Shown here piece after piece: positions 51,721-64,000 of a stretch of DNA of 64,000 bases. The stretch is from the IMG/VR virus record IMGVR_UViG_3300032240_001991, positions 1-64,000 of that record. One strand, 5' to 3'. A program made the position numbers and the translations under genes. Numbering within the stretch: position 1 is the stretch's first letter; each line of letters starts with the position of its first letter. Under the pieces are notes generated by a model, which was not told the DNA's origin, searched no databases, and worked only from the letters and a program-made list of their open reading frames with translations.

Positions 51721-51981
51721 TAGAGAGTGGAGAACCGTACCCCTGGTGATTTTACTACCTTGGTTTTAAAAAACGGCTGCTGCTGCTTAAGTTGCTAATC
51801 TGCGCTAACGCAAGCCTTTTCCTCGGGGTCCACCAGACCCCACCTCAACCAGGGAGACCACCAGACCCCACTATTTCAGCTTTAGCAGAATTTTTGAATT
51901 TTTTTGGTTGACAGAGGAGATGAGAGGGCGCACACGCCCCTCTCAAGCGTGTGCGCTCTGCAGTCTATAAGCAGTGTAGTG

Positions 51982-52215
51982 TTAGGCTGCGTGCTCTATA
52001 GCGGGCAGCGGAAACTCCTTACGCTGATAGTACTCTACCAGCTGCCGCATGATAACAGCGATCTGCTCGCCTTCTTCGCTAACAGTGAAGCGCACGGGAC
52101 TGTGGCGCCAGCTGTTGGTACGCATGAACTCTGTAAACAATCGACGGTGGCGGTTGTTGTTGACATCAAAGTGTGTGATGGGACGCACGGTGCGTGCTGT
52201 AGCAATGTTACGCAT
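51982..52215 (-). CDS. Small early hypothetical protein (paralog of 61612..61821)
   Basis: RP...FD..N..HRR.FT.FMRT..W.H.PVRF shared; own promoter. Confidence 0.65.
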   Translation of the reverse strand: MRNIATARTVRPITHFDVNNNRHRRLFTEFMRTNSWRHSPVRFTVSEEGEQIAVIMRQLVEYYQRKEFPLPAIEHAA

Positions 52216-52250
52216 AGTAGTTGTCCTGGGTTGTTATGTTAACGACTACA

Positions 52251-52279
52251 GTTATACAGTCTAGCCGCTGAGTCCGCAA
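52251..52279 (-). promoter_or_regulatory. sigma70-like early promoter
   Basis: TTGCGG-17-TATAAC. Confidence 0.55.
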
Positions 52280-52435
52280 TGGGTTTATGGGGTGGGCCCC
52301 ATAAAAAAATAACGGTTGCAGACCTGCTGATGAGATGCTAGCGGTGCCCCAGACGCCTACGGGAGGACGCGGGCTTAACACCGTGCGGGCAGGGTTGCAA
52401 GCAATATTTTTTTACGCAAGTGTAAAAAAATATAG

Positions 52436-52464
52436 TTGCACAAGCACTAGCATGGCGCTACTAT
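52436..52464 (+). promoter_or_regulatory. sigma70-like early promoter
   Basis: TTGCAC-17-TACTAT. Confidence 0.55.
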
Positions 52465-52505
52465 TAACGGGCTGCAATGTAGCAGCGCACTAGTAGTACA
52501 AGCAT

Positions 52506-52820
52506 ATGCAAACACAAGCACAAACAACAACAGCCACTGCGCCGCGCGTAAAGCGCAAGTATACAAAGCGTAGCCTGCGCATTGTTACCGCTAACGACGC
52601 CAACACTGCAACCGCTACTGCAAAGCGCAACAGCGCACTGCACACGCAGCGTATGTTAAACTTTGCTACTGCGCAAAGCGCACAGCAAATTAACAAAGCA
52701 CTGTATACAAGCAAAGTACGCTACCTGCAGGCCTGCATTGCGCACAACACAGCAATGCAGCAGTTGCAAGCGCAAATTACTGCGCACTTGCTAAACGTAG
52801 CAGCGCACATACAGTACTAA
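52506..52820 (+). CDS. Small basic early protein (no Glu, one Asp)
   Basis: 104-aa ORF between a promoter and a terminator hairpin. Confidence 0.55.
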   Translation: MQTQAQTTTATAPRVKRKYTKRSLRIVTANDANTATATAKRNSALHTQRMLNFATAQSAQQINKALYTSKVRYLQACIAHNTAMQQLQAQITAHLLNVAAHIQY

Positions 52821-52837
52821 CTGCTACTGCACTGCAC

Positions 52838-52873
52838 AAAACGCACACGCTATGCAAGTAGCGTGTGCGTTTT
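52838..52873. terminator. Perfect 15-bp hairpin, probable bidirectional terminator
   Basis: AAAACGCACACGCTA-tgcaag-TAGCGTGTGCGTTTT. Confidence 0.7.
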
Positions 52874-53455
52874 CGCGTCTGCCCGCTGCACACACTGCAA
52901 AACAACAACTTACGCGCTGGCTAGCTCTGGGGCGCGCTGATCTACTGTATATATGCACAGTAGCAAAACTTTGCAGTCGTTGGGCCTGGGGCACTGCTAA
53001 ACAAGTTTGTGCTGTGGTGAGCGGGCTGAGTGCACTCTGCTGGGGCATCAGCAATCCCATGAATACTGCAGATATCTGTACAACAATACAGTGTGTTTGC
53101 GTGCCTAAGCACAGTAATAGCCGCCCTAAATTAAAAATTTAAGCAGCAGTTTCTTTGTCGTAGTTGTGGGGCAGGATCGTAGGTCTAGTTACTACAAAGT
53201 AAGAGATCTTACCCGGTGGTCGTGGGGACATTAGAGGCCAAACGCGCAAAATTTTTTTACAGATCAGTAAATGCAGAGCTCTCGGTCATGGGGCGTGCAG
53301 ACCCCACTGATCGCTGGAATTAGGCCTAAGAGAGGGCGGTCTGCGGACCCCAGGCAGCAGAAAGCATGAGCAGAGGTTACCCCATAGTACCCAAAATACC
53401 AGCGAGAGATACCCCATGTTGCACAAAAAATCCAGCAAAATATCCCAGAAAACAG

Positions 53456-53483
53456 TTGCGTGCAGCAGCAAAGAGTGTATAGT
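53456..53483 (+). promoter_or_regulatory. sigma70-like early promoter
   Basis: TTGCGT-16-TATAGT with TG immediately upstream of the -10 hexamer. Confidence 0.55.
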
Positions 53484-53524
53484 AACTGGGCTGCAACGTA
53501 GCAGCGACACTAGCAGTAGTAAAA

Positions 53525-54082
53525 ATGCAACAAAACGACGTAGCGCAACAAGTAGCGCAGTTGTTGGCTAACACAAGCGTGACCTTTGCTTGTGTGGCCT
53601 ACAGCACCCCGGTTAAACTAGCGGCTAAAAACAAGCACTTAACTGTGCAGAAGCACACTGTGGCAAACGTGCAACTGTTTGCTAACATTAACGCAGCAAC
53701 CAGCGTGTACGCTAATGCAGTTAAGCGTAGTGCAGCCACACACACCACAAACAGCCCCGCAGCAGTCGCAGAGTTCGCTGCGCAGAGTAACTACTACGAG
53801 CACACTGACTGCTACAGCATTGTGCAGCATAAAAACAACAGTAACCTGTACTTGTACTGCATTTATAACCGCGCACGCAGCAGTTACACCATTGACGGCG
53901 CCCCGGCTAGCCGACAAGATGTAGCAGCCCTGCTAACACCCAGCGCAGCAGAGCAGTTGTTGCATAGCAACAACGTAGTGCATAATGCCGCGCATAACAT
54001 TACGCATAGCGTAATCGTGCGTACTATTGCACTTAGCAACATCAAGCAAATCCGTGCTCGCCGGCAGCAACTGACTTTTTAG
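53525..54082 (+). CDS. Early hypothetical protein
   Basis: 185-aa ORF with an upstream promoter and a downstream hairpin (54109-54137). Confidence 0.65.
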   Translation: MQQNDVAQQVAQLLANTSVTFACVAYSTPVKLAAKNKHLTVQKHTVANVQLFANINAATSVYANAVKRSAATHTTNSPAAVAEFAAQSNYYEHTDCYSIVQHKNNSNLYLYCIYNRARSSYTIDGAPASRQDVAALLTPSAAEQLLHSNNVVHNAAHNITHSVIVRTIALSNIKQIRARRQQLTF

Positions 54083-54217
54083 CAAAAAGCAGCAGCAGCT
54101 GGCGTTAGTAGTAGCGGGGCATCGCGTCCCGCTACTAGTGCTGAGTGCAGGAAACTTCGCCCAGCAAGGGTTCGTTGGGCTGGTGGGGTTTGCCCCAGAC
54201 TTCTCAGAAACCCAACG

Positions 54218-54246
54218 TTGACTACTGGTACTTTTTGCTATACACT
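54218..54246 (+). promoter_or_regulatory. sigma70-like early promoter
   Basis: TTGACT-17-TACACT. Confidence 0.6.
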
Positions 54247-54275
54247 AAACACATACAAGGACATAGGAGCCCACA

Positions 54276-54506
54276 GTGATTGCAACTATTGTGTATGCGC
54301 GTAATCCGCGCCAGCCTAATCCAATCGAAGGCTTTACCTCGTTCGCTCCCTCTGCTGCACACGCACAACGCCGCTTGCAGCAGTTGCAGCGCGACATTGC
54401 TTCCGGGCAGTGGCGTACTTGGACGGGTGAATCCCGGCGGCACTTCGTGGCTCGCGCACAGCGCAACGGCTGGGCGATTGAAGTCAAACAGGCTGTTATT
54501 GTCTAA
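54276..54506 (+). CDS. Small hypothetical protein
   Basis: AGGAG SD + GTG start. Confidence 0.55.
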   Translation: MIATIVYARNPRQPNPIEGFTSFAPSAAHAQRRLQQLQRDIASGQWRTWTGESRRHFVARAQRNGWAIEVKQAVIV

Positions 54507-54519
54507 CAAGGAACTGAAC

Positions 54520-54651
54520 ATGATCCGCAGCATACTAGATCAGTTTGCCAGCATCCCGCGTGATGAATGGCTGCACTTGGCGTCTTTGTTGTTCTTGTCG
54601 TTTGCAATTTCTGCTCTGCTTTACTTTGCACTGATGCTGTTGCTAAACTAA
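54520..54651 (+). CDS. Small membrane protein
   Basis: AAGGA SD; hydrophobic C-terminal helix. Confidence 0.5.
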   Translation: MIRSILDQFASIPRDEWLHLASLLFLSFAISALLYFALMLLLN

Positions 54652-54992
54652 CCCAAGTTTACACAAAGTTTTAAGCTGGCGCGCTCCGTAGCAGTATGGG
54701 GCGCGCGGCCTCACCTCTCCTGGCTCAAAAAATCTGTCTCTCTCAAAATGTAAACACTTACTGGTTCAAGGGGTATACCCCACAACCTAAGGTGGACCTA
54801 GTGCACAGTTTTTGTTTGTTAGTTCTAGTACGCACAACTTAGCAGTTGCCTAAACAACAAACTGTTAGCACACGCGATCTTCCAGTGATAGCGGGGTATG
54901 TGTGCCCCTATAGGCAGCTTGAAGAACGGCAACGGGCTTAAAAATTGTTATAGCAACGCTCACCGCACGCACACGTTAGCTCGGGAAACCAT

Positions 54993-55021
54993 TTGACCAC
55001 TATTCGTTGGCGTGTTATAAC
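54993..55021 (+). promoter_or_regulatory. sigma70-like promoter of csrA
   Basis: TTGACC-17-TATAAC. Confidence 0.6.
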
Positions 55022-55056
55022 ATAACTGCGTTTAACTTAAACAAGGAAGTCTGCAT

Positions 55057-55248
55057 ATGCTAGTGCTCACACGGCGCCCCGAGGAAGGCATCTGGCTGGG
55101 AGAAGACATCTGCATACGAATTGTTGCTATCAAAGGCAACCAAGTCCGTATTGCTATCGACGCCCCTAGTACAGTAAAGATACTGCGTACAGAACTATTA
55201 GACTTGACAGAAACTGTACAAAAACAGTTGACACACAAACACTACTAA
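55057..55248 (+). CDS. csrA: Carbon storage regulator CsrA/RsmA RNA-binding protein
   Basis: MLVLTRRPEEGI...I.IRIVAIKGNQVRIAIDAP.TVKILR.EL matches the CsrA consensus; AAGGA SD. Confidence 0.92.
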   Translation: MLVLTRRPEEGIWLGEDICIRIVAIKGNQVRIAIDAPSTVKILRTELLDLTETVQKQLTHKHY

Positions 55249-55256
55249 GGTACTAT
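55228..55256 (+). promoter_or_regulatory. sigma70-like early promoter
   Basis: TTGACA-17-TACTAT. Confidence 0.65.
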
Positions 55257-55262
55257 TAGCAC

Positions 55263-55418
55263 ATGAACACTGAACACGACGACGAAGAGCTTGACTACTA
55301 CAAGCGCAAAGTTGCTAAAGCGGATGCTACCCTGGATCTGCTGATTGACTGCTTGGGCATTGGCCTAACGCTGTTCGTTGCATACCAACTGTTTCAACTG
55401 GTTCGCGCTTGGCTATGA
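55263..55418 (+). CDS. Small membrane protein
   Basis: MNTEHDDEELDYY...LGIGLTLFVAYQLF; 51 aa, read manually. Confidence 0.5.
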   Translation: MNTEHDDEELDYYKRKVAKADATLDLLIDCLGIGLTLFVAYQLFQLVRAWL

Positions 55419-55627
55419 TCGACATCAACTTTGACCAATTACTGAAGTTAGCCTCGCGCTCCGGTAACAGCATGGTATCCCGCACAGAATGCTTTGGCTG
55501 CGGCAGCAAGCAACGCTTGACACTGACCAGTGATGCGGGTTATCGTCTGTGCCAGAGCTGCCAGGTTGAAGACCCGGAGCTGGCTGACAGTTTCCGTCCC
55601 GAACCTGACTTCTTCGAATACCGCTAG
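55415..55627 (+). CDS. Small zinc-ribbon protein
   Basis: CFGC...CQSC; ATGA overlap. Confidence 0.55.
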   Translation: MIDINFDQLLKLASRSGNSMVSRTECFGCGSKQRLTLTSDAGYRLCQSCQVEDPELADSFRPEPDFFEYR

Positions 55628-56037
55628 CACCACTTCCTCACCTCCTTCCTTCTTTTTCTGGTGCTAGTGCTTTGCGGGCTGCTTAGTAGCCCGCTTTTTT
55701 TTGACCGCAAATTCTGATCGCCATAGAAAGGACGTGGATCCATTCCTGATAAGAATCCATGTTCATGGCTAGCGGGGTATCCTAAGTTCTTACACCTTAG
55801 ATCAAAAAATCTAATCATCTTGTTGTTGGTGTGTAAATTTTAAGTCCGCTAAGTCTTTGATTTATAAGAGGCTGACCCCACAGAATACAGTTTGAATTGC
55901 CAAAGATCGGATAAGATCAGATAAGATATCTGCAGCGAACCTGGGGTAAAGAACGATCCTCTTAGACCCTCTCAAACAAATATGGTAAGTATGTAGATGC
56001 TCTCTTGGGGTTATTGGGCAGCATCTACATTAACTTT

Positions 56038-56065
56038 TTGTAATGTTTAAGCGTTATGTTATAAT
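56038..56065 (+). promoter_or_regulatory. Strong sigma70-like promoter with no downstream ORF
   Basis: TTGTAA-16-TATAAT with extended TG. Confidence 0.55.
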
Positions 56066-56069
56066 TTGC

Positions 56070-56225
56070 AAAATAACAACAACACACGACGCCGTACGAC
56101 TTACGTGGTGAGCTAGAGTTTGCCGGGGTCCGCAACCCTACGTAGCAAGCGCATTTTTAGTACGCATTAGTAGTTACACACGCACATAGCGGACTCCTGT
56201 ACCGATGGGGTTATTGGTACTGTTG
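56070..56225 (+). ncRNA. Candidate structured non-coding RNA
   Basis: Helix GGGGTCCGC (56125-33)/GCGGACTCC (56189-97) and hairpin 56199-56220; no ORF. Confidence 0.3.
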
Positions 56226-56669
56226 TGCATTAAGTTTTTTTAATGTTGTGCGCTGTAAGAAACCCCAAGATAGCCTCTTGCGTACTGCTGTGCAGTTGTG
56301 CTATAAATTAACTTAATGCAGCGCAACTTAACTTAACGTAGCAACATAATATGTTGCAACGCACAAAGACAAGTGCTGTAGCGATGGGAGGAAAAAAACA
56401 GCGACGGGACTGAACAGCCCCTCACCGGCGGCGGTTCTGTAGAGACAGGCGCCTTCGTGGCGCGAGATCTGGCTAGGGCCAGTAGTCCTGACCCCGCCCT
56501 GCGCAGCTAGAAGCCTATCAACGATTTCTCAAGGACCAAGAACCCGGATGTTTCCATTGCAGTCAACGCTACAACAGAGATAACAATAAAGACTGCGATC
56601 TTAGATACAAAGGCAGTAAAGCGTACCATGTGCGTGTGTCCCGTTGGGTAGAGCTTGCGAATTCTTGCG

Positions 56670-56870
56670 TTAGCGGACTTTGTGAATCCAGCAGACTTGA
56701 TTGTTGTGATCGGCAGCAAAGATCACTTCGCGGCGGCGAGCAACACCCAAGTGCTGATTGGGAGCAATCTCTTCCCAAAGGTGCTGAAGAAGAGTAGCAC
56801 GGTAAATGGCATAGCGAGCGAAGTTGCGGTCGTAGTAGCCCATTCGTTCACGGCGGATGTGAAGTTCCAT
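56670..56870 (-). CDS. Small hypothetical protein
   Basis: AAGGA SD; promoter TTGCAA-17-TATATT at 56929-56957. Confidence 0.55.
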   Translation of the reverse strand: MELHIRRERMGYYDRNFARYAIYRATLLQHLWEEIAPNQHLGVARRREVIFAADHNNQVCWIHKVR

Positions 56871-57098
56871 AGTCGGTAGTTCCTTGTAGAAGTTTTAGGT
56901 GGAATCTATTGCGTCTCTCAACAAGCGCAATATATGACTATTTAACTTAAGTTGCAAGTTTTCTCTTGTTAAGACTAAGAATCTCTAGCTTGGCCGTGGG
57001 GTAGAAATCCTAGATAGAAATTCCTTCTAGGGTATTCTAGCAAGCAGCGGGGTATTTGCAGGTCCTGGGTGGATCCCAGGACCCGCTAGGGTTTCTGT

Positions 57099-57389
57099 TT
57101 AGCGATTACGATCCAAGCGATCTACATAGTCCATACGATGTAGATCGCAGTTGCCAAACCAAATGCTGTAACACCAAAAGAACAAGGACGCCCATAGGAC
57201 TTCAAACAAGATGTCGTTGGCTTTATCGTAATGTAAGAAGCCGGTTACTATCCATCCCAACCAGACTGTGATGGCAATCACACCCGAGGTCTTGTATAAG
57301 CGTGAGGCACGCCGATAGCGTGCAATGTCAGCTTCAGTCATTTGTTTCTTTAGGATAGCATCAATAGTTTCTTGACTTGGACGATACAT
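57099..57389 (-). CDS. Small membrane protein
   Basis: Two hydrophobic segments. Confidence 0.5.
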   Translation of the reverse strand: MYRPSQETIDAILKKQMTEADIARYRRASRLYKTSGVIAITVWLGWIVTGFLHYDKANDILFEVLWASLFFWCYSIWFGNCDLHRMDYVDRLDRNR

Positions 57390-57393
57390 AGTG

Positions 57394-57684
57394 CTACACC
57401 AATCGTATGTTCGCGGACAGGTACTTGAGAACTTTGGGATACCCGTGCTTGTCTAGCATCAAGTCCAGCATAGCATTAGCTGAAGTGTCCCGTGCTTCAT
57501 AGCCCAAGCGATCAGCATCAATGCAGCACTCTATTGCGCTGTCGTTGTCAATGCGCTCGCCTATCGTTTCGGCATCGCGCATGACATCTGGGGCTACCAT
57601 GCCCCAGACCTTCAGGATGGGCTTCTTCATGCGCTCTACAAACTCGGAATTAAGAGCGATTGCAGCAATCTTTTTTGGAGCCAT
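57394..57684 (-). CDS. Hypothetical protein
   Basis: Part of a compact leftward run of small genes. Confidence 0.55.
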   Translation of the reverse strand: MAPKKIAAIALNSEFVERMKKPILKVWGMVAPDVMRDAETIGERIDNDSAIECCIDADRLGYEARDTSANAMLDLMLDKHGYPKVLKYLSANIRLV

Positions 57685-57689
57685 CGTAG

Positions 57690-57935
57690 TTACCATCCCA
57701 TCGCTGTCAGCTTACCACGCAACTTAATCTGCGCTTCAGTCAGTTCAACTGTGTGCCACACCCCATTGGCATCCTGCGCACGAGCTATATCGTGTGCATA
57801 AACGCTGCCAATTTCCTTAAAGAAGCCCTCAACTTCAACTAAGCGGAGGTTGCCCTTCTTGCTATCGTACATAGTCCCATACCAGCCGTTCCGCTGCTGG
57901 ACTCGTTGCCCTTTCTTAATGTCGTTGGTCTTCAT
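57690..57935 (-). CDS. Hypothetical protein (SH3-like beta pattern)
   Basis: IKKGQRV...G.M.D...GSVYAHDI. Confidence 0.6.
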   Translation of the reverse strand: MKTNDIKKGQRVQQRNGWYGTMYDSKKGNLRLVEVEGFFKEIGSVYAHDIARAQDANGVWHTVELTEAQIKLRGKLTAMGW

Positions 57936-57942
57936 AACAGTA

Positions 57943-58164
57943 TTACTCCGTGTCTGCTGTTACAATATTAGTGTGCTGCTTTGCGTAGGTTTCGTCAAGA
58001 ACAGTATAGCCTTTGCCGCGGAATTCTTTAGCGAAAGCGGCAACCAGTAGCCAGTTATCAACACTAAGAGCCATCTTCCAGATCTTGTGATGTCCCCAAG
58101 TGACATCAATGGTCTTCTGCGTGTTGCTGATGCGATAAACATTCTTGTTCATGTACTGCATCAT
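57943..58164 (-). CDS. Hypothetical protein
   Basis: Part of the leftward small-gene run. Confidence 0.5.
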   Translation of the reverse strand: MMQYMNKNVYRISNTQKTIDVTWGHHKIWKMALSVDNWLLVAAFAKEFRGKGYTVLDETYAKQHTNIVTADTE

Positions 58165-58301
58165 CCTAATGGCACTGCTACGTTGCAGTAAGCTCATAGT
58201 AACATAATATATAACTTCTGCAACCTTTTTAAAACTGTTTACACTTGGATCTTGGGGTAGGACCCCATGTTTCTACGAATCAAAAAAATTTTTTTTACTG
58301 G

Positions 58302-58330
58302 TTGACAAGTTTTGCTGCGAGTCGTATGTT
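58302..58330 (+). promoter_or_regulatory. sigma70-like promoter (rightward, no clear gene)
   Basis: GGTTGACA-17-TATGTT. Confidence 0.55.
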
Positions 58331-58500
58331 CAATAGATGATTAAACATAATTCGCTGCAACGCAACATAACGTGTAGCGCAACAACAGATCATATGGAGG
58401 AGTGGGGTACGCACCCCACAGAGGACTCACAAAGACATCGCTGAAACAGGGGGGACAATCCACGACTTTTTGATTGAGACGGCCTAGTCTAGCCACGGCC

Positions 58501-58537
58501 AAAAAAACACCCTCGGAGAGGTCTCTCAACGAGGGTG
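58501..58537 (-). terminator. Intrinsic terminator for leftward genes
   Basis: CACCCTCG...CGAGGGTG stem followed by T7 on the minus strand. Confidence 0.65.
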
Positions 58538-58580
58538 AGGGGCCACGTTCGCCCCAAATCAAATTTTCTGAACTGCTAGA

Positions 58581-58790
58581 CTAGATCCAGTAGTCTTCGG
58601 AGTAGTAGTGATCCTGCTCCAACAGGATACGATCGTACTCTGCGCCGCCCGCCGCAACAAAACGCTCCCAGTCGTCCTGTTCCTGTGCTGCGATCGCATC
58701 GTCTGCAAAGCCCTGCTCGTCCAGCCACTGCTGGTACTCGGCATCAAACTCTGCCGCTTCGTCCTGCGCCATTGCCCAAAGCTCGTCCAT
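58581..58790 (-). CDS. Small highly acidic protein
   Basis: AAGGAG SD, start MDELWAM; own promoter. Confidence 0.6.
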   Translation of the reverse strand: MDELWAMAQDEAAEFDAEYQQWLDEQGFADDAIAAQEQDDWERFVAAGGAEYDRILLEQDHYYSEDYWI

Positions 58791-58829
58791 TGCCAGCTCC
58801 TTGTCTGCTGTTGCTACTAACGTGCGTGT

Positions 58830-58858
58830 ACTATAGCAGGCAGTGCACCCGCTGTCAA
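58830..58858 (-). promoter_or_regulatory. sigma70-like early promoter whose -35 box supplies the upstream gene's TGA stop
   Basis: GGTTGACA-17-TATAGT. Confidence 0.7.
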
Positions 58859-59067
58859 CCAGTTTTACTGCGGATGTCTGCCAAGGCAAGGTCATAGGCG
58901 CGGTCCACACGCTCTTCGTAGAACAGCTTGGCAAAAGGCCGATCATAATAGCGATTGCAAAGATACTGACCAAAGCGAAGACCTTGGGAATCTCTCCCCA
59001 TGCCACACTTGTTGATCCACTTAAGGTATTCACTTGATAGCAGTTCCGTTGTTAGATCTTGTAGCAT
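58855..59067 (-). CDS. Small hypothetical protein
   Basis: LRFGQYLCN...LFY pattern. Confidence 0.55.
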   Translation of the reverse strand: MLQDLTTELLSSEYLKWINKCGMGRDSQGLRFGQYLCNRYYDRPFAKLFYEERVDRAYDLALADIRSKTG

Positions 59068-59111
59068 AATCTTTAGCTTAGTCTTCTGTGGCGCAGCGGG
59101 GTATTTACAGC

Positions 59112-59699
59112 CTACCGAAACCTAGGCCCCGCAATCCAAACTACCAAGGTCCGCCTAACTCCGCGAGTCACAGGAGTAACACGATGTGCTACCCAACTTG
59201 GGAACACGTAGGCCATGCCTCGTGCCTTACGAGCAACTATGGGAGGATCCTGTATACCAAACTCCAAGTCCCCACCATCGTAGTCTGCAGGGTCTGACAA
59301 CTGTATCACTACGCTTAACTTTCTAGGCGACGCAGTAAGTATACCGCGATCAGTATGCCACGAGTAATGGGAACCTTCTTCGTCATAGACCGTATACTGA
59401 AAGTCCTCTACAAAGCCAAATAGATCAAACTGAAAGTATTGTCCGTTAGCGGTAGCAGCCACGTTCCTAATAGTGTTGTAAATGAAGTCAGTTTCATCGT
59501 TATGCGGAAGCCAAGCAACCTTGCTCTTCCTACGAGGATCACTGGGGCCGTCTGTAGTGTGTGCAGTTATCAGCGTCTGTGCTTGACCAATCTCAACAAT
59601 GCGATCCAGCTCTTGCTCTGTAAAGGTCTGCTCGCAGCAGGCGTATTCTAACTCACCTCCTGCGAGACTGGGCGAGGGTGGGAACAGGTATACTGACAT
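59112..59699 (-). CDS. PKHD-type 2OG-Fe(II) oxygenase
   Basis: YSWHTD, RKLSVVIQL, YDGGDLEF, FPSWVAHRVTPVTRGVRRTLVVW. Confidence 0.88.
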   Translation of the reverse strand: MSVYLFPPSPSLAGGELEYACCEQTFTEQELDRIVEIGQAQTLITAHTTDGPSDPRRKSKVAWLPHNDETDFIYNTIRNVAATANGQYFQFDLFGFVEDFQYTVYDEEGSHYSWHTDRGILTASPRKLSVVIQLSDPADYDGGDLEFGIQDPPIVARKARGMAYVFPSWVAHRVTPVTRGVRRTLVVWIAGPRFR

Positions 59700-59700
59700 A

Positions 59701-59979
59701 TTAGGTATTATGCAGTCCCTGAAGGACTTTGTCAATCCACTCCCCGTGACCCTTGTGAGCATCTTCTGCTGTGTAGTAACGCTCTACCACACGGCTATCC
59801 CCGTCATCAAAGAACAAGCAGGTCTCCCAAGTGGGCTTTTTGATAAGACCGCCCGGAGTGACCATTAGGCGTACAGTACTGATATCAACATCATGTACAG
59901 TATCATGCCCAACGAGCACAGTGGGATCATTGTGGTGCTCAGCGATACACTTGGCCAAAACATCTAGATCGATTGGCAT
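59701..59979 (-). CDS. Hypothetical protein
   Basis: WETCLF...RY.T.EDA.KGH pattern. Confidence 0.55.
   Translation of the reverse strand: MPIDLDVLAKCIAEHHNDPTVLVGHDTVHDVDISTVRLMVTPGGLIKKPTWETCLFFDDGDSRVVERYYTAEDAHKGHGEWIDKVLQGLHNT
59707..59735 (-). promoter_or_regulatory. sigma70-like promoter with an inverted repeat in the spacer
   Basis: TTGACA-17-CATAAT; spacer contains AGTCC-n5-GGACT. Confidence 0.6.
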
Positions 59980-60031
59980 TGCCAGCTCCCAAAAAATACG
60001 GTTGACCTATACACCGTAAGGTATTAGTGGA

Positions 60032-60232
60032 CTAGCAGTCGGGATCGTAGTCGTGCCACTCCAAGGACTCGTCCACGCTGTCGTAGCGGTCGTCGTAGCG
60101 GTCGTCCTCGTCCTCGTCCTCGTCCTCGTCGTCGCGGAAGGTGCGCTCGTCCAGCTCCTTGTCCTCAGGCAGGTCAAAGTCGCCAGTGTTGTCGTCATCC
60201 AGGACGTCGTCAAAGCTCTTGTAACGCGGCAT
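60032..60232 (-). CDS. Small highly acidic protein
   Basis: D/E-rich; AGGAG SD; promoter TTGACA-16-TAAAAT at 60267-60294. Confidence 0.55.
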   Translation of the reverse strand: MPRYKSFDDVLDDDNTGDFDLPEDKELDERTFRDDEDEDEDEDDRYDDRYDSVDESLEWHDYDPDC

Positions 60233-60486
60233 TGCATTTCTCCTATGTGCTGTGCCTACAGTTCCAATTTTACGTCTTTGCTAACGGTTGTCAACCATTT
60301 TTTGAAAAGATTTTTAGTGTGTTTGGAGCCAAGCAATCATAGCGTTGATCAACGCAAAGATGTGCATGATACCCCACCCAACAAAGATAGCTAGAGCCAC
60401 TGTGCAGACTGCCCAGCCTGCCACAGCCCATTTAAACAAGTTATTAATATTTGGAGTCTTCTGCATGACAACTTCCTCAAAAAAAG

Positions 60487-60562
60487 TGGTGGGTCCTGAG
60501 GGGTTCGAACCCTCGACAAACGGATTAAAAGTCCGCTGCTCTACCGACTGAGCTAAGGACCC
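60487..60562 (-). tRNA. trnK: tRNA-Lys (anticodon TTT) with encoded CCA
   Basis: GGGTCCTTAGCTCAGTCGGTAGAGCAGCGGACTTTTAATCCGTTTGTCGAGGGTTCGAACCCCTCAGGACCCACCA folds as a 76-nt cloverleaf. Confidence 0.95.
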
Positions 60563-60569
60563 AAAAATC

Positions 60570-60740
60570 TTATTCGTTGGTGTCCCAATTCAGCCCATAC
60601 TTGGGCTTACGTTTGTAGTCGTGCTTGCGGTCACGATGCGTGTCCGCACGGTTGAAAGTGTTAAGATTACGGGCCACGGGATTGCGACGGCTAATCACGT
60701 CAGCCTTGAGAAGAAACATTGGTGCGTTTGAATTCTTCAT
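60570..60740 (-). CDS. Small basic hypothetical protein
   Basis: 56 aa read manually (RNPVARNL..FN....HRDRK.DYKRK); promoter upstream. Confidence 0.55.
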   Translation of the reverse strand: MKNSNAPMFLLKADVISRRNPVARNLNTFNRADTHRDRKHDYKRKPKYGLNWDTNE

Positions 60741-60769
60741 ATCAATCACTCAGTTACTGTATGTGTAGT

Positions 60770-60866
60770 AATGTAGCAGGTTATTTACCACTTGTCAACC
60801 TTTATTTCGATAACTCTGTACTATCTGCACTAGGATTACTATAGCAATACCCCACGCAAAAGTCAA
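60770..60866 (-). promoter_or_regulatory. Two tandem sigma70-like promoters
   Basis: TTGACT-17-TATAGT (60838-66) and GGTTGACA-17-TACATT (60770-98). Confidence 0.65.
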
Positions 60867-60893
60867 GCCAAGGCCCTGAACTGTCATGGGGCA

Positions 60894-61154
60894 CTACCGT
60901 TTAGGTCGCGGAACGACGCGTTTGAGCATACGCTGTAGCATGGCGTTGAGACTCCTAAGATCTTCCTTATCCCGTTCTGATCGTTCTAGCCTAGCTTCTA
61001 GAGCTTCAATCTTGATCTTGAGACGGCGCATATCAAGCTCTAGCTCTTGATTTTTCTTGCGTACGGCAGTAGCATCCGCCCGATGTAGATCTCGATGCCG
61101 CATGGCTGCGGATAGCAGCTCATTGAGGTGTCCAAATGTCAGCCCCTCGCTCAT
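60894..61154 (-). CDS. Coiled-coil hypothetical protein
   Basis: Heptad pattern; coupled to the upstream gene. Confidence 0.55.
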   Translation of the reverse strand: MSEGLTFGHLNELLSAAMRHRDLHRADATAVRKKNQELELDMRRLKIKIEALEARLERSERDKEDLRSLNAMLQRMLKRVVPRPKR

Positions 61155-61360
61155 CGGGAGACCTTGATCTGTAGCAGCCCCTTAACGATCACGATCGCAC
61201 ACCAAGTCTCCAGTGTGTAGGGTATTAGCAGTAGGCTACCAAACAGGGTGTTCCACGCCCATATGGCCAGCAGGGGACCAAAGATAATGCTTAGGATCCC
61301 CAGCAGCAGCATTGCTGTGGCTGTGGCTTCTGTATCAGTAGTGGTGTCGCGATCCGACAT
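61151..61360 (-). CDS. Small membrane protein
   Basis: Hydrophobic helices; P.L..WAWNTLF pattern. Confidence 0.6.
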   Translation of the reverse strand: MSDRDTTTDTEATATAMLLLGILSIIFGPLLAIWAWNTLFGSLLLIPYTLETWCAIVIVKGLLQIKVSR

Positions 61361-61559
61361 AATTGAAGTCCTCTAGTATTAGATCACTATCTTCTTCGTC
61401 CTCAATCTCCTGATCAAGGTCAAAGAACTCGTTAGTGTGACAGAGGTCTTTGACTTCGCTTTCGCTCATGTACTTGACACAGGCCGTAATCACAGTGTCC
61501 TTGTCCAGGACGCCCTCTTCAATCAGCTCTAGCAAGCGATTAGTGTATTCACGAACCAT
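61335..61559 (-). CDS. Small hypothetical protein
   Basis: REYTNRLLEL.EEG.LD.D.VI.AC.KYMSE.EV; AAGGAG SD. Confidence 0.6.
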   Translation of the reverse strand: MVREYTNRLLELIEEGVLDKDTVITACVKYMSESEVKDLCHTNEFFDLDQEIEDEEDSDLILEDFNYVGSRHHY

Positions 61560-61586
61560 CAGCTGCTCCTTACTAACTATGCGGGT

Positions 61587-61615
61587 ACTATACAGCCATT
61601 TGCGGCCAATGTCAA
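61587..61615 (-). promoter_or_regulatory. sigma70-like early promoter overlapping the upstream stop codon
   Basis: GGTTGACA-17-TATAGT. Confidence 0.7.
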
Positions 61616-61821
61616 CCAAACTCTCGTTCAGCGTAGTACTCTAGGATCTGCCGCTGAATGTTAGGGATCAGTTCCCCGTCCTCCTTGACTTCAAAGCGTA
61701 CAGGGCAATGACCCCACGCAGAGGTCCTCATGAAGTCCGTGAACCACCGGCGGTGGTCCGTGTTCTGGGCATCAAAGATCACAAGCGGACGTTTGACAAA
61801 GGCCAGTTTAGAACGTAGCAT
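61612..61821 (-). CDS. Small hypothetical protein (paralog of 51982..52215)
   Basis: Shared RP..FD..N..HRR.F..FMRT..W..PVRF motif; start placed at MLRSKL. Confidence 0.65.
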   Translation of the reverse strand: MLRSKLAFVKRPLVIFDAQNTDHRRWFTDFMRTSAWGHCPVRFEVKEDGELIPNIQRQILEYYAEREFG

Positions 61822-61858
61822 TAGGGTATCCTCTGCAGCGGGGTATTCTAGGGAGTTG

Positions 61859-62140
61859 TTAGGCAAACTCAGCAGCGGCAGTCTTGGTAGTAGCAGCGGT
61901 GCCGCGCTTGATCTGCTCTTCTTCTAGAGCCCGTCGTACCTGCTGATTGCCGTTATCAAAGCTGTTGGCCAGCAAATAGTCTACAGCTTCAGCTTTGGTC
62001 ATGGGATGGATCAAGGGCAGGATATCAATGTTGGTATGCCCGTTGGCCGCTAGTACCTTGATACGAGTAATATCGTTAGCAAACCGAACTCGAATCTTAC
62101 CGTTAAGGGTGCTGACACCCGCGTGTGTATAAGTCGTCAT
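61859..62140 (-). CDS. Hypothetical protein
   Basis: GAGG SD; promoter TTGACT-17-TAATAT at 62185-62213; leader palindrome GTTAGGAC-T-GTCCTAAC (62161-77). Confidence 0.65.
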   Translation of the reverse strand: MTTYTHAGVSTLNGKIRVRFANDITRIKVLAANGHTNIDILPLIHPMTKAEAVDYLLANSFDNGNQQVRRALEEEQIKRGTAATTKTAAAEFA

Positions 62141-62193
62141 ATGTAGCCTCTCTGTGTTGTGTTAGGACTGTCCTAACAGTTAATATATTACTA

Positions 62194-62412
62194 TCATGCT
62201 AGATCAAAGTCAACCACTAGTATCAACTCAGCTTCCCAAAGTCTAAGAGCAAAGGTGCTAGAGCCCACTCTAACGGCGAGGGGTCCGCCCCTCGCAGCGC
62301 GAGCCAGTACTACCACACGCTCGCCCGCAACAAACCCCAAGTCAGCCCAACGACCACTAGGAGCAGAAGTAATTCTATAGGCACATCCCTGCACCGCTTC
62401 CGCTAAGGTCAT
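62194..62412 (-). CDS. feoA: FeoA-domain protein
   Basis: MTLAE...RI.....RWADLGFVAGERV.V...A..GGPLAVRVGSSTFALR..EA..I.V. Confidence 0.75.
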   Translation of the reverse strand: MTLAEAVQGCAYRITSAPSGRWADLGFVAGERVVVLARAARGGPLAVRVGSSTFALRLWEAELILVVDFDLA

Positions 62413-63572
62413 GCGACTCGTAACAGTACTGTGTGCTCGTTAGTACGCGGTTTCATAGTGTGCTCCACGCCCTTGATCGCGTCAAACCACTTACGCAGTT
62501 GATTCTTGCCCAGCTTCATAAACTCTGCCAGCTGAGTTTCGGGCTTACGCAGAGTCTTCTGTATGCAGCCTTTATTAGCAATGCCCACAAGACTGGTGCC
62601 TTTAGCCATAATGCTCTTGTCAAATTCCCCACGATATACGCCCAGCTTGCGCCGCCGTACATCATAAACCCACACTTCTGAAGCACCCAAGACTTCTATG
62701 GGCTTGATGCTGGTGATCTTGAGTTCCTTATGCTCCCCAAGATACTTGAGCTTGCGTACCAACTTAGCACGATCTACGGGTTTGGCCTTGCGTACACGAG
62801 CCACTTTCTTTTCAATAGCCAAACGACCCGCACTGGCTTCACAGTCATCTAGAAACGCTATAGCAGCCTTAAGACTCTTGGCACTGACGAATCTGTAGCC
62901 CTCTAAGAGCTGCTGTGTGCTGTTATCATGATCTCGGCTGGTACGAGCCTCCGCTAGTTCGCGAAGTTCCGCTGTAGACCCTGCTAGTGCTGCTGCCAGC
63001 TTCTTAAAGTGTATGGCACTAAAGCGAGCAAATCCTGTGATGTTAGCAGTCTTGCCTTCACGTACAACACCCCGTAGAATGCTGCCCACAATCTCTTCTA
63101 TTTCTATTACTGCTTGATTGACCTGCAGATCCATGCGTTCCTGCACCCCAATGCGCTCTGCAGGCTGCTGCTGTACAGCAGGAGTGTCTTCCGCTACTTC
63201 TACACGGCGTGCTGCAGACTCTGCTATACTAGACCATATGCGAGCCTGCTCAGAGTCTGTAATAGCAAAGCCTTTGACCTGCAGGCGTGCTAGATAGCTC
63301 ATGCTGGTGCTAAGATGTCGATCGCTAGCGCGTGCTAGGATCTTGAGATCTTGACCAGCAGATTCCCCACGATACAGCGTGATCCAGTCTTCAAAGAACC
63401 GTCGCGAGTCCTTGCTGTCACAGGCATAGTTATACCAGTTGAGTGCTCGTATCAAGAGCCCCATGCGTGTGGACTCTGTAACAGCAACACCTTCCCACTG
63501 AGGTTCATAGCCTCGCGTGTGTATAGTATCTGCTGATACCTTAAGATCGTAAGGTTTGAATGCTCGTGCCAT
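62409..63572 (-). CDS. Hypothetical protein (early)
   Basis: 387 aa; promoter TTGACT-18-TAAAAT at 63636-63665. Confidence 0.7.
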   Translation of the reverse strand: MARAFKPYDLKVSADTIHTRGYEPQWEGVAVTESTRMGLLIRALNWYNYACDSKDSRRFFEDWITLYRGESAGQDLKILARASDRHLSTSMSYLARLQVKGFAITDSEQARIWSSIAESAARRVEVAEDTPAVQQQPAERIGVQERMDLQVNQAVIEIEEIVGSILRGVVREGKTANITGFARFSAIHFKKLAAALAGSTAELRELAEARTSRDHDNSTQQLLEGYRFVSAKSLKAAIAFLDDCEASAGRLAIEKKVARVRKAKPVDRAKLVRKLKYLGEHKELKITSIKPIEVLGASEVWVYDVRRRKLGVYRGEFDKSIMAKGTSLVGIANKGCIQKTLRKPETQLAEFMKLGKNQLRKWFDAIKGVEHTMKPRTNEHTVLLRVA

Positions 63573-63769
63573 AGTTAGTATACCTTGTTTAAAAACAGTC
63601 TAAAAAGACACCAAAAACTGTCTCTTTAGGCGGTTATTTTACCACTATTTAGACCAAAAAGTCAAGAAACTGAGCAAATTTTGGTAAAAAATAATTTGGT
63701 TGACAGTGGGGAAGAGAGGCATAGTTAAAATGGTGCCAACCAGTTTCCCCTCAAACCTCACCTCAAACC

Positions 63770-63952
63770 TCACCCCAAATCCGTTTTATAGCGAATGTGT
63801 ACAGCAAAGTCATAGGCTGCTTCAGGATCCAAACCTTTGGCTACAGCCCATCCCAGAGTCAAACTAAACCAATCTTGTTCGCTGTCTGGGTCAATTGCTA
63901 GTGCTCTATCGGAGCATTCGGTTTTGAACAGTTCGATCAATTGTTCGTTCAT
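63770..63952 (-). CDS. Small hypothetical protein
   Basis: GAGG SD + ATG; 60 aa. Confidence 0.5.
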   Translation of the reverse strand: MNEQLIELFKTECSDRALAIDPDSEQDWFSLTLGWAVAKGLDPEAAYDFAVHIRYKTDLG

Positions 63953-64000
63953 TGGTTGCCCTCGGCCATGTCGTTAATAGCGGCCGCTGTTTGGATTCCC

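What the first reader, a model, noticed from the sequence alone, without database searches (positions are those of the whole stretch)
54890..61846. Five exact copies of AGCGGGGTAT in intergenic DNA of the early region
Copies lie at 54890, 55771, 57046, 59095 and 61837, all in the same orientation; three extend to GCAGCGGGGTATT. Five copies of one 10-mer in 7 kb is far above chance. On the minus strand (ATACCCCGCT) two lie 15-28 nt upstream of start codons (61821, 59067). Candidates: an operator or activator site for a phage regulator, a middle-promoter element, an RNA processing site or a replication/packaging iteron (inference).
Basis: partly seen in the sequence, partly recalled or inferred. 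Interest (0 to 1): 0.6.

Follow-up and report, generated by a model that had tools for sequence, protein, structure and literature searches.

The report
Conserved promoter-like motif in jumbo phages
The repeated 10-mer is real and is the core of a 15-base one-directional signal, AATACCCCGCTGTAR, that a whole group of uncultivated giant phages keeps unchanged at the head of their early genes; it is most likely a new kind of phage promoter, but no RNA data exist to prove it.

Summary
AGCGGGGTAT occurs 5 times in the window against 0.03 expected. It occurs 8 times in the 326,658-bp virus contig, plus one variant. All copies are on one strand and all lie between 54.9 and 77.3 kb.

Read on the minus strand, the strand of most local genes, the element is A-ATACCCCGCTG-TA-R. 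One copy lies 14 nt before tRNA-Met, and two lie 15 and 27 nt before start codons.

The same 14-mer is unchanged in 63 related viral and metagenome contigs. There it forms same-strand tandem arrays of 2-4 copies at a fixed place: after two conserved genes and before a conserved non-coding region, a sigma70 promoter, tRNA-Met and early genes.

It has no -35 or -10 partner at a fixed distance. It differs from the sigma70-like (TTGACA/TATAAT) and T4-late (TATAAATA) signals that the phage also carries. No phage RNA polymerase, sigma70-family protein, MotA or AsiA was found, only a gp55 homologue.

Best reading (about 0.45): a third, lineage-specific promoter class, or a core promoter element, recognised by an unidentified factor. 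Rivals are a protein-binding site for an origin or genome terminus, a nut-like RNA element, and a mobile regulatory cassette. No transcript start could be mapped.

The parts
54886..54900 (-). Motif copy 1 (cacATACCCCGCTATCA). It is followed by about 350 nt with no convincing ORF.
55767..55781 (-). Motif copy 2 (aggATACCCCGCTAGCC). It lies about 75 nt upstream of the stem-loop at 55674-55694.
57042..57056 (-). Motif copy 3 (caaATACCCCGCTGCTT). It lies after the stop of gene 57099-57389 and a strong hairpin, and 176 nt before gene 56670-56870.
57061..57084 (-). A 24-nt stem-loop of two 10-base arms lying 5 nt upstream of copy 3. The 58-nt window that contains it folds at -25.8 kcal/mol, z -6.3. 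A comparable hairpin precedes only one other copy (76988).
59091..59105 (-). Motif copy 4 (taaATACCCCGCTGCGC). It sits in the 44-nt gap between the 2OG-Fe(II) oxygenase gene (59112-59762) and gene 58855-59067, and ends 27 nt before the ATG.
61833..61847 (-). Motif copy 5 (agaATACCCCGCTGCAG). It sits between gene 61859-62140 and the gene starting at ATG 61821, and ends 15 nt before that ATG with AGGA in between.
61612..61821 (-). 69-aa gene directly downstream of copy 5. Its orthologue and the orthologue of 61859-62140 flank an inverted copy of the motif in relatives L091 and L041.
58855..59067 (-). 70-aa ORF directly downstream of copy 4.
60487..60562 (-). tRNA-Lys(UUU), a context feature of the same minus-strand early block. 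It has no motif copy directly upstream.
51900..64000 (.). The part of a GC-rich block (48-52% G+C against 35-38% elsewhere) that lies in the window. The block runs to about 74 kb of the contig. Five of the nine motif copies lie in it, all of them in the window. It is also enriched in sigma70-like promoters on the minus strand.

Best explanation
The 10-mer is the invariant core of a compact, asymmetric signal of about 15 bp, (y)(R)A-ATACCCCGCTG-TA-(R), read on the minus strand. It most likely acts at the DNA level as a lineage-specific promoter, or as the core recognition element of one. It would direct rightward-to-leftward (minus-strand) transcription of the early gene block of a T4-related jumbo myovirus distantly related to Pseudomonas phage PA5oct. 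It would be a third promoter class beside the phage's sigma70-type early promoters and T4-type late promoters. Transcription would start at or within about 14 nt of its 3' end, where the following base is a purine in all 9 copies. It would be recognised not by the host sigma70 consensus machinery alone but by an unidentified specificity factor, either phage-encoded or virion-delivered. In most relatives the element occurs only as one tandem array of 2-4 copies at the head of the early region. That array fires into an origin-like, iteron-bearing non-coding region, much as tandem phage promoters sit next to the T7 primary origin and middle promoters sit next to T4 oriF and oriG. In this phage, copies have also spread to internal intergenic sites, before tRNA-Met and small genes. 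What is shown: the motif, its strand bias, its positions, its conservation and its synteny. What is inferred: promoter function, the start site and the recognising factor.
For: (1) Statistics and strand: 9 of 9 copies lie on one strand within 22 kb of a 327-kb contig. (2) Position: copies sit in short gaps after a stop codon and 15 and 27 nt before the next start codon. One copy ends 14 nt before tRNA-Met, which forces any start site to lie at the motif's 3' edge. (3) In more than 20 relatives a canonical TTGAC.-17-TGTATAAT promoter precedes the same tRNA-Met; here the motif occupies that place. (4) Conservation: 63 related loci carry same-strand arrays of 2-4 copies, giving 44 distinct array sequences, never in mixed orientation. 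The flanks are not conserved, while 14 nt are essentially invariant at 45-70% protein identity. (5) Synteny and direction: in 31 of 31 loci the array lies downstream of, and co-oriented with, the homologue of 85760-86527. In 16 of 18 loci the early-gene homologue of 71349-71972 downstream is co-oriented. In L035, L076 and L078 the genes just upstream of the array are divergent, so nothing can read into the array; this favours initiation over termination or processing. (6) It is a separate class. There is no -35 or -10 at a fixed distance. Sigma70-like promoters are separately enriched in the region, 26 against 12.5 expected. TATAAATA late-type sites sit before structural genes, and a gp55 homologue is present. 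(7) An exact inverted copy in an orthologous spacer shows the element works autonomously on DNA and not as part of the mRNA.
Against: No transcript 5' end is available, because no RNA run holds the sequence. No candidate recogniser was found. T7-like RNAP, the multisubunit RNAP domains, Sigma70_r2, MotA and AsiA are all absent from the contig. RNAP catalytic-motif regexes are negative. The 60 early ORFs show no DNA-binding family. The related phage PA5oct depends on host RNAP and has only sigma70-like promoters described (PMC7318152). Copies 76988 and 77311-77298 point against a block of plus-strand genes, so as promoters they would make antisense RNA. In the large relatives (208 kb and 107 kb) the motif occurs only in the single array, next to iteron-like repeats and DnaA boxes. 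That also fits an origin-linked or terminus-linked binding site. Copies only 26 nt apart would be unusually close for bacterial-RNAP promoters.
Confidence: 0.45

Rival explanations
1. The motif is a DNA-binding site for a replication, genome-terminus or packaging function. A phage or host protein would bind the array next to an iteron-type origin, or near the boundary of a long terminal repeat. The scattered copies in this phage would then be secondary.
For: In relatives the array directly abuts repeats of TG(G/A)GA(G/A)AA with a 10-11-nt period, a conserved box whose reverse complement equals two such units, CCAC-rich DNA and TTATCCACA DnaA boxes. In 208-kb and 107-kb relatives the motif occurs only in that one array. 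PA5oct has 39-kb direct terminal repeats, so a late/early boundary could coincide with a physical end (PMC7318152). The invariance of the motif across diverged phages suits a conserved protein partner.
Against: Array spacing is irregular, from 26 to 358 nt in steps of about half a helical turn, which is unlike cooperative iterons. In this phage and in L017 the copies are scattered over 22 kb in short gaps just before genes and a tRNA, always co-oriented. The phage's own early region has no iteron box or DnaA boxes. The terminase gene is 50 kb away.
Confidence: 0.2
2. The motif is a cis-acting RNA signal in early transcripts, such as a nut/boxA-like antitermination site, an RNase processing site or a leader element, transcribed from upstream sigma70 promoters.
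For: It is intergenic and co-oriented with most genes. It partly resembles the lambda boxA sequence CGCTCTTA (here CGCTGTAA); that comparison is from memory and was not tested. Sigma70-like promoters exist upstream of several copies.
Against: An exact copy is inverted in the orthologous spacer of L091 and L041. Two of the phage's own copies are antisense to the local genes. Arrays in L035, L076 and L078 have divergent genes upstream, so no transcript should enter them. There is no Rfam match. Neither flank shows a hairpin in most copies: a strong upstream one in 2 of 9, and moderate downstream folds (z about -2 to -3) in 3 of 9.
Confidence: 0.08
3. The motif marks the ends of mobile regulatory cassettes. 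These would be short promoter or stem-loop repeats that mediate recombination and gene shuffling in the variable early region, as PeSL elements do in T4-type phages.
For: Gene content between the conserved gene pair and the array varies by 0-5 kb among relatives. Copies flank a plus-strand gene block (75240-77282) in this phage. The motif's position and orientation differ between close relatives.
Against: This reading describes a consequence of repeated promoters, not a separate function. Only 15 nt are shared, which is short for homologous recombination. Only 2 of 9 copies have the stem-loop.
Confidence: 0.07
4. The copies arose by chance or by composition in GC-rich DNA and have no function.
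For: The motif is GC-rich, and five of the nine copies, all five in the window, lie in a GC-rich block.
Against: Only 0.03 copies are expected. All 9 lie on one strand. The motif is invariant in 63 related loci whose flanks are unconserved. The reversed-pattern control finds 0.
Confidence: 0.01

Closest known systems
Tandem phage promoters at the head of an early region or next to an origin (T7 A1/A2/A3; T7 phi1.1A/phi1.1B at the primary origin). From established knowledge, not tested here.
   Same: There are two to four co-oriented copies of one promoter sequence at the late/early boundary. In relatives they are followed by an origin-like non-coding region. The element is a compact, highly conserved recognition sequence.
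   Different: T7 A1-A3 are canonical sigma70 promoters, and the phi promoters need a T7-type RNA polymerase gene. Here the motif fits no sigma70 consensus and no phage RNA polymerase is detectable.
T4 middle promoters (MotA box plus -10, sigma appropriation by MotA/AsiA), including those that form T4 oriF and oriG.
   Same: It would be a third promoter class inside the early region of a T4-related phage that also has sigma70-type early and gp55-type late signals. It is co-oriented with the early genes, it precedes tRNA genes, and in relatives it lies next to a putative origin.
   Different: There is no TAnnnT 11-13 bp downstream. The copy before tRNA-Met is too close (14 nt) for a box centred at -30. 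There are no MotA or AsiA homologues. The sequence is unrelated to the MotA box.
PA5oct promoters (TTGAC / TATAATA; Lood et al. 2020, PMC7318152).
   Same: The phage lineage is the same at long range (TerL 54% identical). This phage also has TTGACA-17-TATAAT-like sites in the region.
   Different: The motif described here is not among the promoter types reported for PA5oct.
PeSL (promoter-early stem-loop) cassettes of T4-type phages. From memory.
   Same: Short repeated regulatory sequences lie between small early genes in a plastic region.
   Different: The stem-loop is present at only 2 of 9 copies. The conserved part is 15 nt and is not sigma70-like.
Plasmid and phage origin iterons.
   Same: The copies are direct repeats on one strand, next to DnaA boxes and repeat units in relatives.
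   Different: The spacing is irregular, there are scattered copies before genes, and the motif stays invariant across lineages while the neighbouring 10-11-nt repeats vary.

Membership tests
Sigma70-type bacterial promoter | A -10 hexamer (TAnnnT, with A at -11 and T at -7) and a -35 hexamer 16-18 bp upstream, at a fixed distance from the conserved element | tested here: not met
   A logo of 51 non-redundant instances shows information only at positions -1 to 14. TAnnnT and TATAAT-like hexamers show no preferred offset.
T4-type late promoter (gp55) | TATAAATA at -10, and a gp55 homologue in the genome | tested here: not met
   A gp55 homologue is present (E 1e-7). TATAAATA sites precede late genes. 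The motif's sequence and location are different, so it is a separate class.
T4 middle promoter (MotA-dependent) | A MotA box centred at -30, with a sigma70 -10 element 11-13 bp downstream | tested here: not met
   There is no -10 at a fixed distance, and tRNA-Met starts 14 nt after the 10-mer.
T4 middle promoter (MotA-dependent) | MotA and AsiA genes | tested here: not met
   PF09158 and PF09010 give no hit in the contig even at E <= 1. The contig may be incomplete.
Single-subunit (T7-like or N4-like) phage RNAP promoter | A compact, asymmetric, highly conserved sequence of about 17-23 bp ending at the start site | tested here: inconclusive
   A compact 15-bp invariant element followed by a purine fits this. 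The start site was not mapped, as there is no RNA data.
Single-subunit (T7-like or N4-like) phage RNAP promoter | A cognate RNA polymerase gene in the phage | tested here: not met
   PF00940 gives no hit. The motif-B regex hits only the DNA polymerase. The 4396-aa virion protein has no Pfam or PDB match. The contig is a fragment by CheckV's estimate.
Multisubunit phage RNAP (phiKZ-type) promoter | Beta/beta'-like subunits carrying the DxDGD catalytic loop | tested here: not met
   PF00623 and PF00562 give no hit. A six-frame search for ADFDGD is negative. Highly diverged subunits could still escape detection.
Replication-origin iterons | Tandem direct repeats in helical phase, beside an AT-rich region, DnaA boxes and an initiator gene | tested here: inconclusive
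   In relatives the arrays lie next to an iteron-like region and DnaA boxes. However, the spacing is 26-358 nt and unphased, the phage's own copies are scattered, and it has no such region.
nut/boxA-type antitermination RNA | Transcribed from an upstream promoter and functional only in the sense RNA | tested here: not met
   There are an inverted exact copy in an orthologous spacer, arrays behind divergent genes and no Rfam hit.
PeSL cassettes | An early sigma70 promoter plus an adjacent stem-loop, repeated between early genes | tested here: not met
   The element is not sigma70-like, and a strong stem-loop is present at only 2 of 9 copies.

The most novel reading that the evidence does not exclude
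PA5oct-related uncultivated jumbo phages use a previously unknown transcription specificity. This would be a phage-encoded or virion-delivered factor, or a cryptic polymerase with no detectable similarity to known RNAPs, sigma factors or MotA. It would recognise the invariant 15-mer AATACCCCGCTGTAR. The tandem array at the late/early boundary would launch the first or origin-priming transcripts into an iteron-type replication origin.
Probability: 0.15. Interest if true: 0.75.

Novelty: new variant of a known kind. Interest (0 to 1): 0.58.

Why it matters
Transcription control in jumbo phages that lack their own RNA polymerase is poorly understood. For the PA5oct lineage only sigma70-like promoters have been described. 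An invariant, non-sigma70, one-directional 15-mer marks the head of the early region in dozens of environmental giant-phage genomes. It therefore points to an unrecognised regulatory factor, and possibly to the replication origin. It also gives a simple sequence tag for finding and orienting the early region, and perhaps the entering end, of this uncultivated clade. If it is a promoter, its factor would be a new way of redirecting host RNA polymerase. If it is an origin or terminus signal, it locates those features for the first time in this group.

Tried and rejected
- RNA evidence: the one run search found only DNA holders, all from a single study, and no RNA.
- Rfam: there are no hits at any copy.
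- Literature: the motif strings occur only in unrelated primer lists.
- Isolated phages: neither the region nor a relative's array plus leader matches any of 50,697 phage records, apart from the tRNAs.
- Host alternative-sigma consensus sequences (sigma32 CCCCATNT with CTTGAA, sigma54, sigma28, sigmaE) were compared from memory. None fits, because no upstream partner is conserved.
- Terminator reading: rejected, because arrays occur behind divergent genes and no T-runs follow.
- Hairpin-plus-motif module: only 2 of 9 copies have a strong upstream hairpin.
- Weaker copies: a PWM scan found no degenerate copies in the 62-74 kb gap.
- Naive ORF-based statistics on relatives were too noisy to use. 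Homology-based orientation was used instead.
- Chance hits: many single 14-mer hits in GC-rich unrelated viral contigs are genic. About 40 of the 65 metagenome hits to the 17-nt box, including contigs of 748 kb and 377 kb, lack the motif and are probably chance too.
- Contig starts: looking for metagenome contigs that begin at the motif, as a proxy for transcript ends, gave nothing.
- Candidate recognisers: the conserved gene pair upstream of the arrays looks glycosyltransferase-9-like by language-model neighbours, and the conserved early proteins have no informative family. No candidate recogniser emerged.
- The structure-prediction, complex-prediction and large protein-search tools were not used, because no candidate protein justified them.

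Full report
**Observation.** AGCGGGGTAT occurs exactly five times in the window (54890, 55771, 57046, 59095, 61837), always on the + strand. Dinucleotide-preserving shuffles give 0.03 copies, and none of 100 reaches five. One mismatch adds only 54113. Three copies extend to GCAGCGGGGTATT.

The window is the first 64 kb of a 326,658-bp IMG/VR virus contig. The contig is linear, and CheckV estimates it as 36% complete. Across the whole contig there are eight exact copies; the three new ones are at 74238, 74474 and 76988. A ninth copy, AAACCCCGCTGTAA, runs from 77311 down to 77298 on the minus strand. All nine lie on the same strand. A position-weight scan finds nothing else except a one-mismatch genic hit at 285153.

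**The genome.** It is a jumbo myovirus. It carries a tail sheath, a T4-type terminase, DnaB-like and UvsW-like helicases, a family-B DNA polymerase, ribonucleotide reductase and giant fibre proteins. Its terminase is 54% identical to that of Pseudomonas phage PA5oct.

The motif-bearing region has three notable features:
- Most of it is a G+C-rich block, 48-52% from 51.9 to about 74 kb, against 35-38% elsewhere.
- It consists mainly of small minus-strand ORFs.
- It begins directly after a minus-strand module of tail-fibre-like genes, 77317-85574.

**Anatomy.** On the minus strand the copies read A-ATACCCCGCT-G/A. Their positions are as follows:
- The 61837 copy ends 15 nt before ATG 61821, with AGGA in between.
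- The 59095 copy fills most of a 44-nt gap and ends 27 nt before ATG 59067.
- The 74238 copy ends 14 nt before the 5' end of tRNA-Met, which is followed by tRNA-Leu.
- Copies 76988 and 77311-77298 flank, and point against, a block of plus-strand genes (75240-77282) whose start and stop codons overlap as ATGA.
- Strong hairpins precede only two copies.

**Relatives.** Scanning IMG/VR for the extended motif returned many contigs in which it occurs in tandem. These contigs share proteins with this phage at 45-72% identity.

In total, 44 IMG/VR loci and 19 metagenome loci carry same-strand arrays of 2-4 copies, giving 44 distinct array sequences. Spacing ranges from 26 to 358 nt with a median of 57. 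No pair is ever in opposite orientation.

A logo of 51 non-redundant instances carries information only from position -1 to 14 (AATACCCCGCTGTA, then R) and a weak GGTCTG just after. The flanks are unconserved. Part of that invariance comes from how the instances were found, because the search pattern was the 14-mer itself. However, additional copies picked up through the 8-mer core show the same consensus, with AAA and TGA variants at the 5' end.

**Synteny.** The order is fixed. First come homologues of 86529-87305 and 85760-86527; the latter looks glycosyltransferase-9-like by language-model neighbours. Then comes 0-5 kb of variable genes, and then the array. After the array there are 260-390 nt of conserved non-coding DNA, then a canonical TTGAC.-17-TGTATAAT promoter, then tRNA-Met, then early genes. 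All of these run in the motif's direction. The upstream gene is co-oriented in 31 of 31 loci, and the downstream early gene in 16 of 18.

In L035, L076 and L078 the genes immediately upstream of the array are divergent. In records of 208 kb and 107 kb the motif occurs only in that single array, and the reversed-pattern control finds none.

**What it is not.**
- It has no sigma70-type -10 or -35 at a fixed distance. Good sigma70-like promoters are separately enriched in 52-64 kb, 26 against 12.5 +/- 4.3 expected, mostly on the minus strand.
- T4-type late sites (TATAAATA) occur 22 times. Sixteen are intergenic, and 14 lie within 60 nt of a co-oriented start, including structural genes. A gp55 homologue is present. 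The phage therefore has recognisable early and late signals for host RNA polymerase, and the motif is a third kind.
- The MotA-type geometry does not fit, and MotA and AsiA are absent.
- No T7-like or multisubunit RNA polymerase, no sigma70 region 2 and no catalytic signatures were found.
- The 4396-aa virion protein matches no Pfam family and no solved structure.
- Sixty early ORFs yield no DNA-binding family.
- No Rfam family, no isolated phage and no paper contains the element.
- PA5oct is reported to depend on host RNAP, with TTGAC/TATAATA promoters (PMC7318152).

**Interpretation.** Five features are the signature of a transcription signal that acts on DNA:
- a strict strand bias;
- intergenic placement just before genes and a tRNA;
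- occupation of the slot where relatives have a sigma70 promoter before tRNA-Met;
- tandem arrays pointing into the early genes, even behind divergent genes;
- invariance amid unconserved flanks.

An exact copy lies inverted in the orthologous spacer of L091 and L041. This argues against a cis-acting RNA element and for an autonomous DNA element. I therefore favour a lineage-specific promoter, or core promoter element, at about 0.45. The start would be at or just after the motif and the recogniser is unknown.

The main rival, at about 0.2, is a protein-binding site tied to replication or the genome terminus. In relatives the array abuts repeats of TG(G/A)GA(G/A)AA with a 10-11-nt period. It also abuts a conserved box, CATTTGACTATAGCCTCTCATCCCCAC, whose reverse complement equals two such units, and in some relatives TTATCCACA DnaA boxes. 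PA5oct has 39-kb terminal repeats.

The two readings can be combined. Tandem promoters beside an origin recall T7 phi1.1A/B and T4 oriF and oriG; that comparison rests on established knowledge and was not tested here. This phage itself lacks the box, the repeats and the DnaA boxes, and instead has scattered copies.

**Limits.** No RNA data exist for this sequence, so no start site is shown. The contig and all relatives are metagenomic fragments, so the absence of a polymerase or factor gene is not proof. ORF calls are my own simple ones.

Noticed in passing
window 51900-64000, continuing to about 74000 of the contig (L001 1-10000): A sharply bounded G+C-rich block (48-52%) lies in a 35-38% G+C jumbo-phage genome and coincides with the early-like small-gene region. 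At least one relative looks similar: two loci flanking the same array, L019 at 45% on the early-gene side and L020 at 38% on the other side. The cause is unknown. It could be a terminal repeat, host-like composition of the first DNA to enter, or acquired DNA.
   Followed up: partly
relatives, e.g. L042:3650-4060 (-), L067, L035, L121, L133: Downstream of the motif arrays lies a conserved non-coding region of about 300 nt. It contains tandem TG(G/A)GA(G/A)AA units with a 10-11-nt period, an invariant box CATTTGACTATAGCCTCTCATCCCCAC (the reverse complement of two units), CCAC-rich DNA, TTATCCACA DnaA boxes in some relatives, and then a strong TTGAC.-17-TGTATAAT promoter before tRNA-Met. It looks like an iteron-type replication origin or an operator region. 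It is absent from this phage.
   Followed up: partly
contig-wide, e.g. window 23597, 25326, 45610, 47271: T4-type late-promoter octamers (TATAAATA) occur 22 times; 16 are intergenic and 14 lie within 60 nt upstream of a co-oriented start. A gp55 homologue lies at contig 289236-289517 (+) within a 306-aa open frame.
   Followed up: yes
window 52000-64000: There is an excess of near-consensus sigma70 promoters on the minus strand, for example TTGACA-17-TATAGT at 61615-61587 and 58858-58830, and TTGACA-16-TAAAAT at 60294-60267. The count is 26 against 12.5 expected.
   Followed up: partly
L001 11240-13282 (contig 75240-77282): A block of nine small plus-strand genes, most with overlapping ATGA start and stop codons, is embedded in the minus-strand early region and bracketed by motif copies that point against it. 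Its G+C content is like the rest of the genome. The last ORF (84 aa) looks like a membrane protein, and its ATG sits in the 3' arm of a 28-nt hairpin.
   Followed up: no
window 54100-56500: This is a long stretch with few credible ORFs but many structures. They include the palindrome GGGGTATACCCC at 54774-54785 (which contains the motif's half-site), a strong plus-strand terminator at 55674-55694, and G+C-rich hairpins near 56400-56500. It may encode small RNAs.
   Followed up: no
L091 6552-6674 (also L041): In a relative, the spacer between the orthologues of 61859-62140 and 61612-61821 is 123 nt rather than 37 nt. It holds the exact 14-mer in inverted orientation, preceded by the GGGGCactggGCCCC hairpin, and carries a 17-nt perfect inverted repeat. 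The orthologue upstream has gained a lysine/alanine-rich, histone-H1-like tail.
   Followed up: partly
window 60487-60562: The phage tRNA-Lys(UUU) is 92% identical over 78 nt to the tRNA-Lys segment in the attP region of Haemophilus phages HP1, HP2 and S2. This is a weak hint of a gammaproteobacterial-type host.
   Followed up: no
contig 265215-278405 (-): A 4396-aa ORF matches only PHROG 10938 ('virion structural protein'). It has no Pfam family and no relative with a solved structure.
   Followed up: partly
L001 7349-7972 (contig 71349-71972): This is the most widely conserved early protein of the clade (207 aa). It starts MPNWC, has a weak DUF1281_C (Api92-like) hit and a very acidic tail. 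It may be a DNA-mimic or anti-restriction type early protein.
   Followed up: no
whole contig: CheckV rates a 327-kb contig as only 36% complete, although it already holds head, tail, replication and nucleotide-metabolism modules. The estimate may be unreliable for this clade, or the genome may be far larger.
   Followed up: no
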